DNA of 63,727 bases, filler included, from Octopus bimaculoides (taxonomy: Eukaryota), in the NCBI RefSeq assembly GCF_001194135.2. It is 7 parts of 7 records of this genome, joined end to end, with 100 filler letters (N's around TTAATTAATTAA, not from the genome) between each part and the next. Parts side by side here need not be neighbours in the genome. Positions count along the whole stretch, not along the records: positions 1 to 31,312 come from NC_068981.1; 6 more parts are not named here. One strand, written 5' to 3'. This document shows, one piece after another, positions 5,859 to 29,571 of this stretch. The first letter of the stretch is position 1. Each line of letters starts with the position of its first letter. A program made the translations under genes and the position numbers. Under the pieces are notes generated by a model. The model worked only from the letters and a program-made list of their open reading frames with translations, ran no database searches and was not told the origin of the DNA.

Positions 5859-6377
5859 GACATAAATCGATAGCGAGATGTTTGCATAGTCGTACAATAA
5901 ACATACACGCACATAAATGTATATACAAATACACGTGTTTTTCTGTATAAATATGGATACAGCGAGTGATAAAGATCCACACGTATATATATATATATAT
6001 ATATAACAATACAAATGATATATGAGCATATGCATCTATACATACATATATGTACATACCTACATCTACATGTATATATAGATGCATATCCCGGTACAGA
6101 ACGTCAGAAAAGGAACGGGAACATAAAACACAAAAACGGACTTTTTTACGGACAACAGAATGAACACAGAGGAACAAAGACGAGCCACTTATGGAACTTT
6201 TTCCTTCATCAGCTGCCTCTATTCCAAACTAGGCGTTTCGAAGATGAGGCNNNNNNNNNNNNNNNNNNNNNNNNNNNNNNNNNNNNNNNNNNNNNNNNNN
6301 NNNNNNNNNNNNNNNNNNNATTCTTTTAAAATACTTTTCATTTAATTTTTCCAAAATTTAATTGTTTCCCACACTTA

Positions 6378-8724: not shown

Positions 8725-9552
8725 TACATACATAAGTGCAGAAGTGTGTATATCACTTAAAGAATGTTGATTAAAATTGACAGTTTTTTTTCTTTTTTGT
8801 TGCAGTGTCTCACTTGACAGCAAAATTAACCGTGCTTCTTCTGGTGCCAACATTTAATAACAAAACGATGCCTAAACACAGAGTGTGTGTGGGCGGGGGG
8901 GGGGCTAAGAATTTGGGCGGAGTCTAATAAATCTGTTAACAAGATGTACACTATATATACAGTTTACTGGGCCGTTAGTTTTGTTTTAAACTATATATAT
9001 GCCTGTAGACACACACACACATTTGTAAATGCGTTTGTGTGTTACATAAGTTCATGCTACACATGTATGGCAAAAAACATGTTTCCATTGTTTGTTGTAA
9101 TCGAGTTAGGTAACGTCTGTGTGTGTGTGTGTCTGTGTGTGTGTGTCTGTGTGTGTGTGTCTGTGTGTGTGTGTGTGTGTGTGTGCAAGGATAGTTTATC
9201 AACGTTTTTGGTACAACAACGGCGACGACTATGACAATGATGATGCTCGTGGTGGTGGAGATAATATGAGGAGGGCAAAAGATTAAATCAAATTAGAATT
9301 AAGGAGAGAAGAGATGTGGAGAAGGACATCTCTCATCCTCAAATATCTGCTTGACGATCACTGATGACGAGCATTTACATCATCAACAAAGTCATCATGC
9401 ATGCAACAGTATTCCCCTTGACGACGACGACGACGACTATGATGATAATGATGATGATGATGACTTTTACACTGTTTTTCGTGAAAAAGTTTTATTTTTT
9501 TTAAAATTTACTAAACAATGATTGTCTCTTAGTTGAATGGTAAGAACATCCT

Positions 9553-9637
9553 TATTTACATTATTTACATATACCCTCCAGCCTTCATCAGGTGTCTTGG
9601 GGAAGTTTCGAACCTGGGTTCTTAAGGTATTTTTCGA

Positions 9638-9680
<43 letters not shown>

Positions 9681-9705
9681 ATTATTATTCAGGTCACGGC
9701 CTGGA
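9553..9705 (-). mobile_element. Inverted, internally deleted partial copy of the tRNA-head/hammerhead element, fused head-to-head with the forward copy
   Basis: Reverse complement of about 9742-9861 joined directly to the reverse complement of the GTAAATAATGTAAATAA tail (about 9917-9933). Confidence 0.85.
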
Positions 9706-9956
9706 GCGCGGGCTACTAACCCCAAGATTCTGAGTTAGATTCCAGGCAGTGACCTGAATAATAATATTAATAATAATAATAATAACATCGAAAAATACCT
9801 TAAGAATGAGAACCCAGGTTCGAAATTTCCCCGAGACACCTGATGAAGGCTGGAAGGTATATCAGCCGAAACGTTGTGTCAACAACAAACAAGATGAGGA
9901 CAAATATCCGTCAAATGTAAATAATGTAAATAATTCCTCATCTCTTAAATATAGAA
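9706..9956 (+). mobile_element. tRNA-headed SINE-like element containing a hammerhead ribozyme (family H), 5'-truncated
   Basis: Shares head GGGCTACTAACCCCAAGATTCTGA and tail GTAAATAATGTA[AC]ATAATTCCTCATCTCTTAAATATAGAA with 62438-62739; B-box-like GTTAGATTCC at about 9733-9742. Confidence 0.8.
9835..9880 (+). ncRNA. Minimal type I hammerhead ribozyme (no helix III loop; dimer-type)
   Basis: GACAC-CTGATGA-A-GGCTGG-AAGGTATA-TCAGCC-GAAAC-GTT-GTGTC: 5-bp stem I, intact CUGAUGA and GAAA cores, 6-bp stem II, palindromic AACGTT, GUU cleavage triplet. Confidence 0.8.
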
Positions 9957-11725
9957 CTGTAAGAACGTCCGACAAACTGTGTTAGTCAGTGATCTTTATG
10001 TTCTGGGTTCAAATTCTGCTGAACTAAACTTTACTTTTCGTCCATCCGGGATCGATTAAAATAAAGTATCAATCAAGGACTGATATTAATGTCTTCGATT
10101 ACACATTCTCCAGAACTTCGTAAACTTGTATCGAGCTTTAGAAATCAGGAGTTACTTCTCCCATAAGACCTAAACTAGAAACTTTGGAAGGTCACTTGCG
10201 GACACAGTTGATTATATGAACCTCAGTATTTCACTGGTATTTTATTATATTAACACGGATATAATAATAGAAATATTTGATACGGGCGTGTTTGGAACAA
10301 ACAAAACAAATAGACGAAGTGAAATAATGCCAGACTCTTGTCCTTTGTCTTAGAGAACCTATAAAAGTCTTTTATATTGACGATTACAAAAGCAACGTAA
10401 CTAGTTCCACGTGGTTTTCGCAAAAATTATACACAAAACACGAATAAAACCAAACAACAAGCAATGTTTATAATGATATAAAATGCTGCAGTTTCGCTCT
10501 AAGTCATTCCGTCATTCATTGTTCCGATACAGTGTACCTCGGAGTACATAGCGCACTGTGTTATCCTATTATTCAATGCAAACAAGATATGATAAAGTCT
10601 CGGCTGCCGTTTCGAACAGGTCGAGAGATCAGAAAAAGACTTCCTCATTAAGTAAAACTCTAAATAAAGCTACGACCTTGGCCCTAACATAATATTCGTA
10701 TTATTCATTAGAACAATAGAAATATCTAAACATCTCCAACTAAACCACACTGAACTAAGTCTATTTCGTTTTCACTACATTACACAACAATAATTGAAAC
10801 CTCTGCTGCTGCTGCTAGCTTGTTCTGTATTGTCTTAGAGTCTTTAAGTTAAAACACAAACAAACGTGTGTTCTTTCTCAAGGCTATCCAAATACAATGT
10901 TCCAGGAGAACTGTTTACCACAAGAATAACACTGATAATGCAATTAATGTCTCCTATAAATGTATGTAATGCACACACGCAAACACACACACACACACAC
11001 ACACACTCGCTCTCTCTCTCTCTCTCTCTCTCTTGTATGAACTAATTAGTTGCTTATAAGAGGATATCTATTGTGCAAAATGATTCCTTTAACTCTCAAC
11101 CTCTAATCCCAAACGCATTTTCACACGTAAGGTGTGTATGTGTTTGTCTAAATGAATATCTGTATNNNNNNNNNNNNNNNNNNNNNNNNNNNNNNNNNNN
11201 NNNNNNNNNNNNNNNNNNNNNNNNNNNNNNNNNNNNNNNNNNNNNNNNNNNNNNNNNNNNNNNNNNNNNNNNNNNNNNNNNNNNNNNNNNNNNNNNNNNN
11301 NNNNNNNNNNNNNNNNNNNNNNNATATATGTATATATATATATATATAGAATGTGTATGTGTGACTGTGTGCATCTGTAGACACTTATAGATATGTCAGT
11401 GTGAAAAGAACTAAAAACGAAAACCATTGTCCGTTTCTGAATGTCCTCCACCCCATCTGTTGCCACAAAAATGGCTGTTGTTATTTCCAATTCTGTAATA
11501 TTGGTATATAATTCTTTGATAATTCCCCTTCAACCAAAATATAGTTCCAGTACACTTGATTCTTTACACAAACATTGCTGCCATATTTTCTACTCCGTCC
11601 ACTCAAATTAACTCTAATGATTTTTAATTACATCATTAAAAATATTATTGGTATTACTAACGAAACCAAGCTGTTACCAATACTGTAACAATAATTGTAA
11701 CTTTTAACATAATGCCTTCGTCGAA

Positions 11726-11935: not shown

Positions 11936-13274
11936 TACGGTTGCCGTTCTCTGATTTGAAAACAAGTGGAAACTCTTGGAGTATGAAACGGTTATTCTTT
12001 AGCCACTTCACTTCAGTCGTTTACACGTTGTTAGGAAAGGCATGAAGACCATTACATCGCATTTTCTTGTGTAAATGAAGAGCTTTTTTACCTAATCGAA
12101 ATCAATCCATGTTATTCTTGTCGTTCTCAACGTTCCACCAGTCAAATTACCATTTCTCACCCCACCACCACCACCACTGCCACCCTTAAAACTACCATTT
12201 CAATGGCAGTCATTTATTTATTTATCTTTTTTTCTTTTGTCTTGTTTTACGTTAGTCCCCTATTTAAAAATAATAACCGATGCTATTTTCTTTCTTTTAG
12301 TCTGAAATTCTATTATTTTTTTAAAATAACACTCTTCCCCTTTCTTTTCATTAGAAATTCTCTATAATGGTAAAATCATGTCATTTGAGGATAAAGGCTA
12401 AATTTGGCAAACCTCAAGGGCTGGAAATGAGGGGGTGGGTGGGGTCTAAATAAATATCAATGAAATAAATTTTCTAAACAAGCATAAAACAATTAATCTC
12501 AATATTCAGAGATGGTGATTCCTTGTTAGTCGGCTTAAGGAAGCACAACATCTAACCAACACTTTTCCGAAGTAGGTTTTCGTTTTTTTTTTTAATATAG
12601 GAATCACATTTTTTTAAAGCTAAAACCACCGGAGTTTTTTTGTCTTTTTCGAATCATGCCCCACGTCAGCATCCATACATCACCCCAGCCCCTGTCACGA
12701 AATTAATTTCTATTATTTTTCTTTACTGCCTCTTCATTAATGATCCCCTCATCTCTTTATCTTCATTATCCAGCCTTTCGTTATTGCATCAACAAAACTT
12801 CAGCATCTACACTACCCATCCCCCGCCACCTCCTCCTCCTTCTACTCGGTCCTTCCATGTCAAAGATTTAAACCCGCTTGCTCTGTGGTTGGAGTTACAT
12901 TTTAAACAAATAAGGGCGAAACCATCCGAACGTGTCGAAACTGGAGTCGAATAAAAACTAAATTTCAAGACAAACATATGCAGCAGCGATAACATTCTTG
13001 GAAATGACTCCAAGAGATCTTCTATTCCCCACACAATTGCCATCACGTGATTCCATTGACTTCCTCCATTACTCAAAAATAAACATTATGCATTATTAAT
13101 AAGAGCTTTCTCTTTTTTTTTAAGACTATGGTTTCCGTTTCGTTTTGCAATTTCTCCGCTATTTCCATTCCTTGTTTGTGGTTTAATTGCTTAAAGCTAC
13201 ATTTTTATTTGGATTCCTGACGAAGAATAATTGAAATGGTACAACGATTGAAGAAGGGGTTGTTATCATTAGTC

Positions 13275-13500
13275 CCGCTGGCAGAATCGTTTGCACGCCG
13301 AGATAAATGCTTAGCGGTATTTCGTCTGTCGTTACGTTCCGAGTTCAAATTGCACCGACGTCGAATTTGCCTTTCATCCTTTCGGGGTCGATTAAATAAG
13401 TACCAGTCACGCATTAAGGTCGATGTAATCGTCTTGACCGCCCCCGCCCCCACAAATTTGAGGCTTTTTGCTTCCAGTAGAAAGGTTTATTATTATTGGG
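13275..13500 (+). mobile_element. SINE family M
   Basis: GCTGGCAGAATCGTT...GAGTTCAAAT...CTTTCATCCTTTCGGGGTCGATTAAATAAGTACCAGT, ending in a short ATT tail. Confidence 0.85.
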
Positions 13501-15491: not shown

Positions 15492-15623
15492 NNNNNNNNN
15501 NNNNNNNNNNNNNNNNNNNNNNNNNNNNNNNGTGTTGTCTCCAGCTCAGCCTTTTCCTAACCATGTCGGGATTTGCTACTTTAAATAGTATATCTTTTGC
15601 ATCAAGGGTTTTATAAATGTTTC

Positions 15624-16270: not shown

Positions 16271-16294
16271 GGTTTTACATTTTGGTACAAGGCC

Positions 16295-16440
16295 AGCAAT
16301 TTTGGGGGAGGTAATCGACTAATGCTTATTTTATCGACCCCGAAAGGGATGGAAAGCAAACTCGACCTCAGCGGAATTTGAACTCGGAATGTAGAGTCGG
16401 AACAAGTGCTGCTAAGCATTTTCCTGATGCGAGCCTTACA
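16295..16440 (-). mobile_element. SINE family M, partial
   Basis: Reverse-complement match TTTTATCGACCCCGAAAGG...GGAATTTGAACTC. Confidence 0.75.
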
Positions 16441-22014: not shown

Positions 22015-22420
22015 GTTAAGGCGGCAAGATGGCAGAATCATTAGCGCACCGGACGAAATGCTAAGCAGTTCTGAGTTCAAATTCCGCCGAGGTCGACTTT
22101 GTCTTTCATTATTTTGGGGTCGACTTTGCCTTTCATTATTTTGGGGTCGACGAAATAAGGACCAGTAAGCAATGGAGTCGATGTAACCGACTGACCCCTT
22201 AACGCAGTAATTTCAGACCTATAATTAAGAGGATTATCATTATCAATTTTAATTATTTATATATAGCTTTCATCGCCATTGGCAGAATCATTAAAGCGTC
22301 TTGCTGTATATATTCCAGTTCTTTAAGTTCTGAGTTCAAATCACGCCGAAGTCAAATTTGCTATTCACGTATTGGGATCGATTAAAATTGCTGGCCTTGT
22401 TTCTAAACCAGATTATTATT
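22015..22420 (+). mobile_element. Two tandem SINE family M copies; the first has an internal 27-bp duplication
   Basis: GGCAGAATCATTA heads at about 22031 and 22281; GGTCGACTTTG[TC]CTTTCATTATTTTGG repeated twice in the first copy. Confidence 0.8.
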
Positions 22421-25243: not shown

Positions 25244-26007
25244 GTGGGGAGGGGCAGACAGAGGAACAGAGGGTGGGTGGGGTGTAGTTGTTACAAAGGT
25301 TTTTTGGAACTGAGCCATGAAAGCTAGGATTCTCATTGGCGTTGTAATATTCCTACCAATAGTTTTTATGTTTTTTTTTTATGAATGGTTAACAAATTTT
25401 GCGTTTGCAACCTCAACAAAGCAGAAAAATAGAGAACAATGGGGGTACAAAATATGAAACAGATTGTAAAGAAGGGGGGTGGTGTTTTTTTCATATNNNN
25501 NNNNNNNNNNNNNNNNNNNNNNNNNNNNNNNNNNNNNNNNNNNNNNNNNNNNNNNNNNNNNNNNNNNNNNNNNNNNNNNNNNNNNNNNNNNNNNNNNNNN
25601 NNNNNNNNNNNNNNNNNNNNNNNNNNNNNNNNNNNNNNNNNNNNNNNNNNNNNNNNNNNNNNNNNNNNNNNNNNNNNNNNNNNNNNNNNNNNNNNNNNNN
25701 NNNNNNNNNNNNNNNNNNNNNNNNNNNNNNNNNNNNNNNNNNNNNNNNNNNNNNNNNNNNNNNNNNNNNNNNNNNNNNNNNNNNNNNNNNNNNNNNNNNN
25801 NNNNNNNNNNNNNNNNNNNNNNNNNNNNNNNNNNNNNNNNNNNNNNNNNNNNNNNNNNNNNNNNNNNNNNNNNNNNNNNNNNNNNNNNNNNNGTATATAT
25901 ATATATATGTGTGTGTGTGTATATATATATGTGTGTGTGTGTATATATATATGTGTGTGTGTGTGTATATATATATATGTGTGTATATATATATATATAT
26001 GTGTGTG

Positions 26008-26321: not shown

Positions 26322-27028
26322 AAGAGAGAGGCGGCACCCTACGGAATCCAATACTTCACTACGACTTTGTCGCCCCGGGAAGAATGAAAGGTTAAGTTGA
26401 CCCGGGTGAGATTTGAAACCAGAATGTTAATAACAAAAAGAAAAAAGAAACAAAAAAAGAAACAAAAAAAGAAACAGACAGGACAAATATCGCGATGCCT
26501 TAATGACCCGATGTTCTAACGGTTCTGCTAATTCTGCAGAAATAAGAATTCTTTCTTGAAACGTATTTGCATTGACATATATACACACATACATGCATAG
26601 CGGTTCGGCAAATACATCGATAGAATAAGTAGAAAGCTGAATAAATAAATAAATAAATAAATACGGAGGTTCATTCATTCGATTATAACATTCTTCAAGT
26701 CGTTGCCCTAGAATGGCCGCAGTCTAATGACTGACACAAGATTATATANNNNNNNNNNNNNNNNNNNNNNNNNNNNNNNNNNNNNNNNNNNNNNNNNNNN
26801 NNNNNNNNNNNNNNNNNNNNNNNNNNNNNNNNNNNNNNNNNNNNNNNNNNNNNNNNNNNNNNNNNNNNNNNNNNNNNNNNNNNNNNNNNNNNNNNNNNNN
26901 NNNNNNNNNNNNNNNNNNNNNNNNNNNNNNNNNNNNNNNNNNNNNNNNNNNNNNNNNNNNNNNNNNNNNNNNNNNNNNNNNNNNNNNNNNNNNNNNNNNN
27001 NNNNNNNNNNNNNNNNATATATATATAC

Positions 27029-29371: not shown

Positions 29372-29571
29372 GTGTATATATATATATACATACAGAGAGA
29401 GAGGGGGAGANNNNNNNNNNNNNNNNNNNNNNNNNNNNNNNNNNNNNNNNNNNNNNNNNNNNNNNNNNNNNNNNNNNNNNNNNNNNNNNNNNNNNNNNNN
29501 NNNNNNNNNGTTTATCCATTTACAATCTTTAGTTTGATAGACAGATAAAAGTGGCTGGAAAAAAAAAGATG

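What the first reader, a model, noticed from the sequence alone, without database searches (positions are those of the whole stretch)
9706..9956. tRNA-headed SINE-like element carrying an intact dimer-type hammerhead ribozyme
Seen: a tRNA-like head (anticodon-arm-like GGG-CTACTAA-CCC, B-box-like GTTAGATTCC; the A-box is visible in the 62438 copy), an (AAT)n linker, then GACAC CUGAUGA A GGCUGG..UCAGCC GAAAC GUU/GUGUC. A tail hairpin follows (AGATGAGGA/TCCTCATCT), with no poly-A and no obvious TSD. Helix III is only the palindrome AACGUU, so cleavage should need two copies. Known: Schistosoma Sm-alpha (tRNA-related, hammerhead-bearing) and retrozymes are precedents. I do not recall such a family described for cephalopods, but cannot verify novelty.
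Basis: partly seen in the sequence, partly recalled or inferred. Interest (0 to 1): 0.85.

Follow-up and report, generated by a model that had tools for sequence, protein, structure and literature searches.

The report
Octopus SINE-like repeat with minimal hammerhead
This is a copy of an octopus short mobile repeat that carries a minimal hammerhead ribozyme motif of the kind known from Penelope-like retrotransposons, inserted as two truncated copies joined head to head; it is a new family member of a known kind rather than a new kind of element.

Summary
The hammerhead motif is real. It lies at 9835-9880 (+), with predicted cleavage after 9875. In 2000 simulated windows, none gave a motif this good. 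It has every hallmark of the minimal, dimer-dependent hammerhead of Penelope-like elements (PLEs).

9552-9705 is a reverse-complement copy of 9741-9933. That copy has lost about 53 nt, including the 3' half of its ribozyme. The so-called tRNA head of this copy is the apex of a roughly 400-bp palindrome and lacks its A box. A 9-12-nt direct repeat flanks the palindrome. The insertion sits inside another SINE.

Related copies were recovered through spurious ORF calls from Octopus bimaculoides, O. sinensis and unnamed sequencing runs. They show a family with this order:
- a tRNA-like head
- (AAT)n
- a spacer
- the minimal hammerhead
- a 3' region with two alternative ends about 28 nt apart

Head-to-head twin insertions recur in the family. 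Together with the optional tail, this matches the published PLE integration signature.

The family looks like a non-autonomous, SINE-like parasite of PLE machinery. This copy lacks the A box and has no sense-strand partner ribozyme, so it is probably inert. The PLE partner and ribozyme activity remain untested.

The parts
9520..9551 (+). 5' part of the host SINE-like repeat that received the insertion (A-box-like TAGTTGAATGG at 9530-9540)
   Evidence: Homologous to the 5' region of three other copies of the same repeat in the window, at 13.3, 16.3(-) and 22.3 kb
9540..9551 (.). Left copy of the flanking direct repeat GTAAGAACATCC (candidate target-site duplication, 9-12 nt)
   Evidence: 11 of 12 identical to 9959-9970; the one difference is CpG to CpA. 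It directly abuts the left arm.
9552..9705 (-). Left arm: inverted copy of the element. It is 5'-truncated inside the head (starts at TCCAGG), ends at 3' end 'site A', and carries (AAT)n as (ATT)n at 9640-9689.
   Evidence: the repeat finder I1-I3, I14; alignment A1
9570..9596 (-). Dead half-hammerhead of the left arm: helix I 5' strand, CUGAUGA, helix II 5' strand and loop. The 3' half is removed by a 53-54-nt deletion equivalent to 9863-9916.
   Evidence: Alignment A1; coordinates
9706..9756 (+). Truncated tRNA-like head of the right copy. 9706-9740 is the unique apex of the palindrome. It holds the anticodon-loop-like CTACTAA (9713-9719), the B-box-like GTTAGATTCC (9734-9743) and the acceptor-like CAGTGACC. 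The A box is missing.
   Evidence: Head alignment A5 with L011, L012, L015 and L007; relaxed ARAGORN; no Rfam tRNA hit
9757..9785 (+). (AAT)n microsatellite internal to the element
   Evidence: Present at the same place in window left arm, L007, L009, L011, L012 and L015
9786..9834 (+). Spacer. It includes ATG 9806, which opens a 59-codon frame running through the ribozyme.
   Evidence: ORF list. The same frame is open in more than 150 protein clusters.
9835..9880 (+). Minimal type I hammerhead: helix I GACAC/GUGUC, core CUGAUGA, unpaired A9847, helix II GGCUGG/UCAGCC with an 8-nt loop, GAAA, and A15.1-C15.2-G16.2-U16.1 with no loop. U17 is 9875 and the predicted cut follows it.
   Evidence: The family majority consensus restores the same intact motif.
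9881..9933 (+). AC-rich 3' region up to 3' end 'site A' (...GTAAATAA). It contains the hairpin strand AGATGAGGA at 9892-9900.
   Evidence: Window left arm, L009, L010, L012 right and approximately L007 right end at or near the equivalent of 9933
9934..9961 (+). Optional 28-nt 'tail' ending at 3' end 'site B' (...TATAGAACTGTA). It contains the hairpin strand TCCTCATCT at 9935-9943.
   Evidence: The tail is present in L004 (both arms), L007 left arm, L011 and P0001, and absent from the copies that end at site A
9959..9970 (.). Right copy of the flanking direct repeat GTAAGAACGTCC. Its first 3 nt overlap the end of the tail (microhomology).
9971..10100 (+). 3' part of the host SINE-like repeat (B-box-like GGTTCAAATTC at 10006-10016)
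   Evidence: BLAST and alignment to the other copies in the window

Best explanation
The locus is one insertion of a short non-coding retroelement family of octopods.

Full-length unit. It is about 270-330 nt, in this order:
- a degenerate tRNA-like head, the presumed internal Pol III promoter
- (AAT)n
- a spacer of about 50 nt
- a minimal type I hammerhead
- a 3' region with a hairpin and two alternative ends about 28 nt apart

The 3' half is of the type found at the pseudo-LTR/ORF junction of Penelope-like elements (PLEs).

Proposed mechanism.
- Shown here: two 5'-truncated copies lie head to head, and the 3' end of each abuts the flanking DNA.
- Shown in vitro for a lizard PLE: the GIY-YIG endonuclease cuts both strands of the target, and each free 3' end primes reverse transcription inside the 3' module of an element RNA.
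- Inferred: the same process made this twin. The two cDNAs stopped inside the head and were joined. One end started at site B (with tail) and the other at site A (without tail). The 9-12-nt repeat is the staggered-cut duplication.

The ribozyme. Its sequence is intact in the right arm, but it cannot form helix III alone. It would cut only when paired with a second copy through ACGU. The left arm's ribozyme is destroyed, the two arms are on opposite strands, and the A box is gone. This copy is therefore most likely an inert relic. The motif is intact probably because the insertion is young: the arms differ by about 3%.
For: Motif and statistics.

Match to PLE minimal hammerheads. The motif has all four features that Cervera and de la Pena 2014 list as emerging beyond their search descriptor (PMC4209133):
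- it belongs to a consensus family
- an extra nucleotide lies between A9 and G10.1
- G10.1-C11.1 is present
- positions 15.2/16.2 are palindromic
It also has the short helix I and long helix II typical of these motifs. The lizard PLE PAc has the same ...GAAACGU(C/U) arrangement at its unit junction.

Family evidence:
- The 59-aa ORF across the ribozyme hits O. bimaculoides A0A0L8FV75 and the N-terminus of an O. sinensis gene model.
- It also hits 154 protein clusters.
- DNA of eight independent copies aligns only within 9757-9961, at 77-84% identity.
- Their majority consensus is an intact hammerhead.
- A distant lineage (L006) is 79% identical over 67 ungapped nt. Helix II there has U-A replaced by C-G.

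PLE-type integration signature:
- Head-to-head twins occur in the window, L004, L007 and L012, with different junction points.
- An inverted copy leads the tandem array in L006.
- The 3' ends are discrete, at site A or site B, and the tail is on one side only in the window and in L007.
- This matches Craig et al. 2021, who describe an inverted 5'-truncated copy and a 30-40-bp tail at one end.
- It also matches Frangieh et al. 2024, who found two internal RT start sites, the tail lying between them, and both strands cut and extended.

Discrete unit:
- L011 and the left arm of L012 start within about 2 nt of each other at the start of the tRNA-like head.
- ARAGORN at 80% threshold calls L011 and the consensus tRNA-Ser(ACT), against 2 of 300 shuffles.
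- The sense strand 9706-9961 has no TTTT.

Flanks are a host SINE.
Against: - No autonomous PLE sharing this 3' module was found. The window and the loci hold no PLE ORF. The search for cephalopod PLE proteins returned only lizard, insect and fish elements.
- None of the 154 ORF hits is a long RT protein.
- Rfam finds no hammerhead and no tRNA, even with the laxest settings. Default ARAGORN finds nothing.
- Covariation in the 11 DNA copies is not significant: 79.3% of cells pair against 76.6% in shuffles, and 48 of 500 shuffles do as well. The protein-level proxy is confounded by lineage and by CpG decay.
- The direct repeat is ambiguous. Its first 3 nt overlap the tail. AGAACGTCC also resembles what follows the tail in L004 and L011. 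The whole left flank resembles the tail over 44 nt.
- Published PLE minimal hammerheads cleave poorly even as dimers, and cleavage was not needed for PAc insertion in vitro.
Confidence: 0.72

Rival explanations
1. The copies are only 5'-truncated fragments of the pseudo-LTR/3' end of an autonomous Penelope-like element. On this reading there is no dedicated SINE, and the 'head' is just PLE 3'-UTR sequence.
For: All the PLE-type features apply equally: the minimal hammerhead, the inverted twins and the tail. 5' ends vary among copies: L004 starts near GAGAAC and the L007 left arm starts after the ribozyme. The tRNA likeness is weak.
Against: The longest copies (L011, both arms of L012) all stop within about 10 nt of the same point, at the start of the tRNA-like head. 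None runs on into coding sequence. There is no RT or GIY-YIG similarity in any locus. No long ORF carries the module's peptide.
Confidence: 0.17
2. The element is a non-LTR retrozyme. Tandem hammerhead-bearing units would be transcribed, self-cleaved as dimers and circularised into small circRNAs, which then act as transposition intermediates.
For: In other taxa, relatives of the same module form head-to-tail arrays of 129-131-nt units, each with the motif (L006 10154-10512). Many hits contain two or three stretches. Retrozymes are proposed to be PLE derivatives.
Against: No octopod-type copy seen here is tandem. They are single or inverted. The unit has a promoter-like head and discrete linear 3' ends. 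The window has only one sense ribozyme.
Confidence: 0.06
3. The element is a foldback or MITE-type DNA transposon with long terminal inverted repeats. The hammerhead-like motif would be incidental.
For: The region is a 380-410-bp near-palindrome with TA at both ends of the arms.
Against: Other family members are single, non-palindromic copies (L009, L010, L011, L015), or are twins with different junction points. The arms end at two discrete element 3' ends rather than at symmetric termini. The right arm has a tail that the left lacks.
Confidence: 0.02
4. The hammerhead is a chance match, or the palindrome encodes a hairpin RNA or microRNA precursor.
For: Rfam gives sub-threshold miRNA-family hits across the palindrome (MIR2606, 54.8 bits against a gathering score of 139.7; mir-1271; mir-344). 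No Rfam hammerhead hit was found.
Against: The miRNA hits are generic long-hairpin matches far below threshold. The hammerhead core and both helices are restored by the family consensus. They are conserved at 79% with a distant lineage, whereas the flanks are not. None of 2000 simulations gave an equal motif.
Confidence: 0.03

Closest known systems
Minimal type I hammerheads (min-HHR) of Penelope-like elements (Cervera and de la Pena 2014; Lunse, Weinberg and Breaker 2017)
   Same: The catalytic boxes match. Helix I is short (5 bp) and helix II long (6 bp). There is an unpaired nucleotide after A9, a G10.1-C11.1 pair, no helix III and a palindromic 15.2/16.2. Such motifs occur mostly as dispersed single copies, sometimes as pairs 100-700 bp apart on opposite strands.
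   Different: Here the motif sits in a short unit with a tRNA-like head and no ORF. No flanking PLE was found. Cleavage was not tested.
PLE insertion architecture (Craig et al. 2021; Frangieh et al. 2024, Poseidon of Anolis)
   Same: An inverted 5'-truncated copy adjoins a direct copy. An optional tail lies at one end, between two discrete 3' ends. The AC-rich stem-loop region lies downstream of the hammerhead. The ribozyme core overlaps an ATG-initiated frame.
   Different: The tail here is 28 nt (37 nt if AGAACGTCC is included), against the published 30-40 nt. The distances from the cut site to the ends are 58 and 86 nt. No RT or EN gene is attached.
Sm-alpha / Sj-alpha SINE-like elements of Schistosoma
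   Same: Both are short non-coding repeats combining a promoter region with a hammerhead that has an unstable helix III (review text).
   Different: Sequence similarity to Sm-alpha was not tested because no Sm-alpha sequence was at hand. The phylum also differs.
Metazoan non-LTR retrozymes (Cervera and de la Pena 2020; Li et al. 2026 preprint)
   Same: Both are non-autonomous, hammerhead-bearing, and proposed to derive from and depend on PLEs. Relatives of this module in other taxa are tandem arrays.
   Different: Retrozymes are tandem units of 170-400 nt with canonical type I hammerheads, expressed as circRNAs. The octopod copies are single or inverted, have a head and linear ends, and carry the minimal variant.

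Membership tests
Hammerhead ribozyme, minimal type I (PLE type) | Catalytic core C3 U4 G5 A6 N7 G8 A9 ... G12 A13 A14, A15.1/U16.1, H17 | tested here: met
   CUGAUGA at 9840-9846, GAAA at 9868-9871, U16.1 at 9874 and U17 at 9875
Hammerhead ribozyme, minimal type I (PLE type) | Helices I and II flank the core, with G10.1-C11.1 | tested here: met
   GACAC/GUGUC (5 bp) and GGCUGG/UCAGCC (6 bp, first pair G-C); none of 2000 simulations was as good
Hammerhead ribozyme, minimal type I (PLE type) | Unpaired nucleotide between A9 and G10.1; helix III absent with palindromic 15.2/16.2 | tested here: met
   A9847; GAAA-C-G-U with no loop; criteria taken from PMC4209133
Hammerhead ribozyme, minimal type I (PLE type) | Helices supported by compensatory changes across the family | tested here: inconclusive
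   In 11 DNA copies, 79.3% of cells pair against 76.6% in shuffles (48 of 500 shuffles do as well). There is one lineage-level U-A to C-G swap in helix II.
Hammerhead ribozyme, minimal type I (PLE type) | Match to a curated covariance model (Rfam Hammerhead_1, _3, HH9, HH10, II) | tested here: not met
   No hit at E up to 10, even on a 65-nt window. I infer that this is because the Rfam hammerhead models include a helix III.
Hammerhead ribozyme, minimal type I (PLE type) | Site-specific self-cleavage (as a dimer) | not testable with these tools
   Needs in vitro transcription of monomer and tandem dimer. The predicted monomer fold pairs GAUG with CGUU and is inactive.
Penelope-like element (autonomous) | ORF with PLE-type RT and a GIY-YIG endonuclease | tested here: not met
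   tblastn with the Poseidon_Ac protein against the window and all loci found nothing. The window has no credible ORFs.
PLE-mediated insertion (autonomous or trans-mobilised) | Inverted 5'-truncated copy adjoining a direct copy; optional tail at one end; two discrete 3' ends | tested here: met
   Seen in the window, L004, L007 and L012; criteria
PLE-mediated insertion (autonomous or trans-mobilised) | 3' module shared with a resident autonomous PLE | not tested
   No cephalopod PLE sequence could be retrieved. The top 120 hits to Poseidon_Ac were lizard, insect and fish.
tRNA-derived SINE (SINE2) | tRNA-related head with A and B boxes at tRNA spacing | tested here: inconclusive
   The window copy lacks the A box. 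L011 has TGGCATAATGG, CTACTAA 24 nt downstream of it and a B-box-like motif 43 nt downstream. ARAGORN at 80% threshold calls tRNA-Ser(ACT), against 2 of 300 shuffles. Default ARAGORN and the Rfam tRNA model give no hit.
tRNA-derived SINE (SINE2) | Discrete unit with a defined 5' end, flanked by target-site duplications | tested here: met
   The 5' ends of L011 and the L012 arms fall within about 10 nt of each other. Direct repeats flank the element in the window (9-12 nt), L007 (ATAAATAG) and L011 (about 10 of 12).
tRNA-derived SINE (SINE2) | 3' tail shared with a LINE, or a poly-A/simple-repeat end | tested here: not met
   No poly-A. The ends are the two PLE-like sites. No LINE partner was examined.
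Non-LTR retrozyme | Head-to-tail tandem repeats, each with a type I hammerhead | tested here: not met
   The window has a single sense motif. Octopod-type copies are single or inverted. Only the distant relatives in L006 are tandem.

The most novel reading that the evidence does not exclude
Octopods harbour a tRNA-promoter SINE that has captured the recognition and initiation module of a Penelope-like element, minimal hammerhead included. It would be mobilised in trans by PLE RT/EN through priming from both target strands. That would be a clear SINE-PLE partnership, analogous to SINE-LINE tail sharing. Because the SINE has no ORF, it could help to ask what the PLE hammerhead is for. Copies also donate an ATG-plus-splice-donor first exon to predicted host gene models.
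Probability: 0.4. Interest if true: 0.6.

Novelty: new member of a known kind. Interest (0 to 1): 0.4.

Why it matters
The role of the minimal hammerheads of Penelope-like elements is still unknown. They cleave poorly in vitro and were dispensable for insertion of a lizard PLE. A short, ORF-less, promoter-headed family that keeps only the hammerhead and the about 90 nt after it would define the smallest RNA that PLE machinery accepts. It would give a simple substrate for testing whether cleavage, dimerisation or only protein binding matters.

For cephalopod genomics it names a repeat family that current tools do not recognise as ribozyme or tRNA. The family forms long palindromes, which are a hazard for assembly and a possible source of double-stranded RNA. 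In predicted gene models it also supplies alternative first exons.

The element is still an ordinary kind of thing. Dispersed minimal hammerheads number in the thousands in many animal genomes, and SINE-like hammerhead repeats have been known from Schistosoma since 1998.

Tried and rejected
- Exact 21-mer scans of the metagenome, prokaryote-genome and viral collections gave three chance hits in bacterial genes and nothing else.
- Rfam at gathering threshold, and at E up to 10 on 1 kb, 79 nt and 65 nt, found no hammerhead or tRNA. The only hits were sub-threshold miRNA hairpin matches caused by the palindrome. I rejected these.
- ARAGORN at default settings found nothing in the window or the loci.
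- DNA look-ups for the two named Octopus proteins failed because neither is on record.
- A search for a cephalopod PLE partner with the published Poseidon_Ac protein returned only lizard, insect and fish elements among the top 120.
- tblastn of that protein against all held DNA found nothing.
- The RT ORF near the L006 array is not PLE-like. It carries Pfam RVT_1 on record, has no similarity to Poseidon_Ac, and its sequence motifs look like an AP-endonuclease LINE to me.
- A nested-structure evaluation of the double hammerhead is impossible, because the dimer crosses like a pseudoknot.
- L009 might have been the orthologous locus or shared the host SINE. I rejected this because flank similarity is not above shuffles (94 of 500).
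- An assembly artefact as the source of the palindrome is rejected. The arms differ by a 53-nt deletion, a 6-nt indel, microsatellite length and about 5 substitutions.
- The supplements of the two key PLE papers are not held as text.

Full report
**1. What is in the sequence**

The hammerhead spans 9835-9880 on the + strand:
- helix I: GACAC / GUGUC
- core: CUGAUGA (9840-9846)
- an unpaired A at 9847
- helix II: GGCUGG / UCAGCC, closed by an 8-nt loop
- GAAA (9868-9871), followed directly by C-G-U-U

A15.1, C15.2, G16.2 and U16.1 are therefore contiguous, so no helix III can close. The scissile bond would follow U9875.

A descriptor of my own finds only this site in the 31-kb piece. Of 2000 Markov simulations, 0.55% contain any hit, and none has helices this long. 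The simple pattern CTGATGA...GAAA is not significant on its own.

The predicted monomer fold pairs GAUG of the core with CGUU, which is an inactive conformer. Rfam finds no hammerhead even on a 65-nt window at E up to 10. It finds no tRNA on the head. ARAGORN finds nothing.

**2.

9552-9705 is the reverse complement of 9741-9933, at 94-98% identity in three blocks plus a 19-nt terminal block. The 35 nt at 9706-9740 are the only unique sequence between the arms.

The left arm carries the 5' half of the ribozyme on the minus strand (9570-9596). It lacks 53-54 nt equivalent to 9863-9916, so its ribozyme is dead. The arms also differ by a 6-nt indel, by microsatellite length and by about five substitutions. 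The palindrome is therefore not an assembly artefact.

The left arm is directly preceded by GTAAGAACATCC (9540-9551). The right side, after a further 25-28 nt that the left arm lacks, is followed by GTAAGAACGTCC (9959-9970). The single difference is a CpG transition.

Joined together, the flanks form a SINE-like repeat with A-box-like and B-box-like motifs. Three more copies of it lie at 13.3, 16.3 and 22.3 kb. The whole of 9552-9961 is thus one insertion into another repeat.

**3. Relatives**

The DNA collections gave only chance hits. The window has no real genes.

A 59-codon ORF (9806-9985) runs through the ribozyme, so I searched for it as a protein. It hit three kinds of target:
- a 51-aa 'uncharacterized protein' of Octopus bimaculoides, at 83% identity
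- the first 37 residues of an Octopus sinensis gene model, found with a six-frame query
- 154 clusters in the exhaustive library

The clusters fall into two groups. The first is an octopod-like group of single copies (MRTQVRNFP.TPDEGW.VYQPKRCVNNKQDEDKYPSNVNNVNN). The second comes from other organisms. In it, a 43-aa unit (QTPEEGRRTYRPKRCGNNNKDEDNSPK...) repeats two or three times and is often preceded by the antisense translation of the same unit.

I fetched DNA for eight independent octopod-type copies, all from Logan runs SRR118693xx of an organism that is not named, and for one array of the second group. The octopod-type copies match the window only between 9757 and 9961, at 77-84% identity. 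They are paralogous family members, not the same locus.

**4. Family anatomy**

The alignments give this order:
- a tRNA-like head
- (AAT)n
- a spacer with the ATG
- the hammerhead
- an AC-rich stretch
- a hairpin
- one of two ends

Window left arm, L009, L010, L012 right and approximately L007 right stop at ...GTAAATAA, equivalent to window 9933. Window right arm, both arms of L004, the L007 left arm, L011 and the O. bimaculoides ORF continue through TTCCTCATCTCTTAAATATAGAAC.... Comparison with L007 and the O. bimaculoides ORF places the end of this tail at window 9961.

The majority consensus of the 11 hammerhead regions is an intact motif. The individual copies from the other species are decayed, largely at CpG sites. 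The window copy is the only one that passes the descriptor. This fits its youth, since its arms differ by only about 3%.

Pair counting on these 11 sequences shows no significant covariation. The array in L006 is 79% identical to the window over 67 ungapped nt spanning the ribozyme and the next 25 nt. In its helix II, the octopod U10.4-A11.4 pair is replaced by C-G. A codon-level proxy over 140 units shows more pair-compatible combinations than shuffles do (72% against 66%, with 2 of 1000 shuffles as high). This is confounded by lineage and by CpG decay.

**5. The head**

The window head is truncated. In L011 the head reads TGGCATAATGG. CTACTAA begins exactly 24 nt downstream, which corresponds to tRNA positions 32-38. 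A B-box-like AGTTCAATTC begins 43 nt downstream. Both arms of L012 carry GTGGTTAAGAGCAC...GGCTACTAACCCC...GAGTTTGATTC...CAGTGACC.

ARAGORN at 80% of its threshold calls L011 and the family consensus tRNA-Ser(ACT). Only 2 of 300 shuffles give any call at that setting. Rfam's tRNA model and default ARAGORN remain silent.

The longest copies (L011 and the two arms of L012) begin within about 10 nt of each other at the start of this head. The sense strand of the window copy has no TTTT, and the first one downstream is at 10035. I read this as a degenerate tRNA-derived promoter head and a discrete unit. I hold that reading at about 60%.

**6. How it got there**

Head-to-head twins recur in the window, L004, L007 and L012, with different junction points. 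In each, the element's 3' end faces outward on both sides. In the window the tail is on the right only, and in L007 on the left only. L007 has the direct repeat ATAAATAG at its two ends.

This is the architecture described for Penelope-like elements: strong 5' truncation, an adjacent inverted 5'-truncated copy, and a 30-40-bp tail at one end (Craig et al. 2021). Frangieh et al. 2024 explain it for Poseidon of Anolis. There the protein cuts and extends both target strands. Reverse transcription starts at two internal sites in an AC-rich stem-loop about 90 nt past the hammerhead cut site, and the tail is the sequence between those sites. The published Poseidon_Ac consensus has the same ...GAAACGUC arrangement at its unit junction, with the ORF starting in the ribozyme.

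The ribozyme also fits the minimal hammerhead of PLEs point by point. That paper notes that most such motifs are dispersed singles, and that some are pairs on opposite strands 100-700 bp apart.

In L1 twin priming, as I know it, the inverted segment comes from a more 5' part of the RNA. Here both arms contain the same 3' terminal region, so that mechanism would not explain this structure.

**7. What is not shown**

- I could not obtain any cephalopod PLE to test whether it shares this 3' module.
- None of the 154 ORF hits is a long RT protein.
- Whether the family is a dedicated SINE-like parasite or merely truncated PLE ends rests on the coincident 5' ends of three copies.
- The direct repeat is not a clean target-site duplication. 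Its first 3 nt overlap the tail. The left flank resembles the tail over 44 nt (5 of 2000 shuffles do as well). That may reflect selection of a tail-like target, or chance.
- Cleavage, transcription and circularisation are untested.
- This copy has no A box, only one sense ribozyme, and an antisense half-ribozyme. I expect it to be inert.

**8. Comparison and novelty**

The ribozyme is a member of the PLE-type minimal hammerheads, with all sequence-level criteria met and activity untested. The locus is not an autonomous PLE, because it has no ORF. It is not a retrozyme in the strict sense, because it is not tandem, although distant relatives are. It works like the Schistosoma Sm-alpha elements, which combine a promoter with a hammerhead.

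In the searchable literature I found no description of a hammerhead-bearing repeat family in cephalopods. The giant squid genome paper only counts 235 Rfam Hammerhead_1 hits. Short non-autonomous Penelope derivatives are known elsewhere.

I class it as a new member of a known kind, of moderate interest.

Noticed in passing
window 9440-9551 + 9971-10100; also 13230-13440, 16290-16400 (-), 22300-22400: An abundant SINE-like repeat with A-box-like and B-box-like motifs and a conserved ...TTCGGGATCGATTAAA... segment. The copy at 9.5-10.1 kb is the one split by the hammerhead element. ARAGORN does not call it a tRNA.
   Followed up: partly
proteins P0002 (Octopus sinensis LOC115224785 isoform X2) and P0027 (Octopus bimaculoides 'dystrobrevin beta isoform X1', XP_052825882.1): In both predicted gene models, the first 30-37 residues are the element's ORF (MRTQVRNFP...YPS). 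The rest of P0027 matches the dystrobrevin-type EF-hand_2 domain. The element therefore appears to donate an ATG plus a GTAAAT splice donor as an alternative first exon. The hammerhead would then lie inside the mRNA.
   Followed up: partly
L006 10076-10512 (ENA ERZ21867824 ctg122172l; organism not named): One antisense partial unit is followed by about three head-to-tail units of 129-131 nt, each with a slightly decayed minimal hammerhead homologous to the octopus one. Many other proteins show the same two or three tandem units. This looks like a very small retrozyme-like array.
   Followed up: partly
window 9800-9810 with 9938-9950: In the fold of 9800-9961, TTAAGAATGAG pairs with CTCAT(C)TCTTAA of the tail and closes the whole ribozyme module. 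This competes with the local hairpin AGATGAGGA/TCCTCATCT. ATGAGA/TCTCAT can also pair in L011.
   Followed up: no
window 9511-9551 versus 9926-9970: The host sequence left of the insertion resembles the element's own 3' end and tail over 44 nt (score 30 against 17.6 +/- 3.3 in shuffles). This may reflect choice of a tail-like target by the endonuclease, or coincidence.
   Followed up: partly
window 9806-9985 (+) and the 154 clusters: The reading frame that starts at ATG 9806 and runs through the ribozyme is open in very many copies and lineages, including across whole tandem units. It may be a remnant of the N-terminus of a PLE ORF, as in Poseidon_Ac, whose ORF starts inside the hammerhead. 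It may also be only ascertainment bias, since ORF callers report only open frames.
   Followed up: partly
window 6251-6319, 11166-11323, 15492-15531, 25497-25892, 26749-27016, 29411-29509: Runs of N (assembly gaps) lie next to (TA)n/(CA)n-type microsatellites. Long (GAC)n/(GAT)n tracts lie at 9213-9254 and 9421-9462, just upstream of the locus. The piece contains no credible protein-coding ORF.
   Followed up: no
L006 3162-5246: A 694-codon ORF carries Pfam RVT_1 on record. Its sequence motifs look to me like an AP-endonuclease LINE. It has no similarity to the Poseidon_Ac PLE protein. It lies 4.8 kb upstream of the hammerhead array and is not its partner by position.
   Followed up: partly
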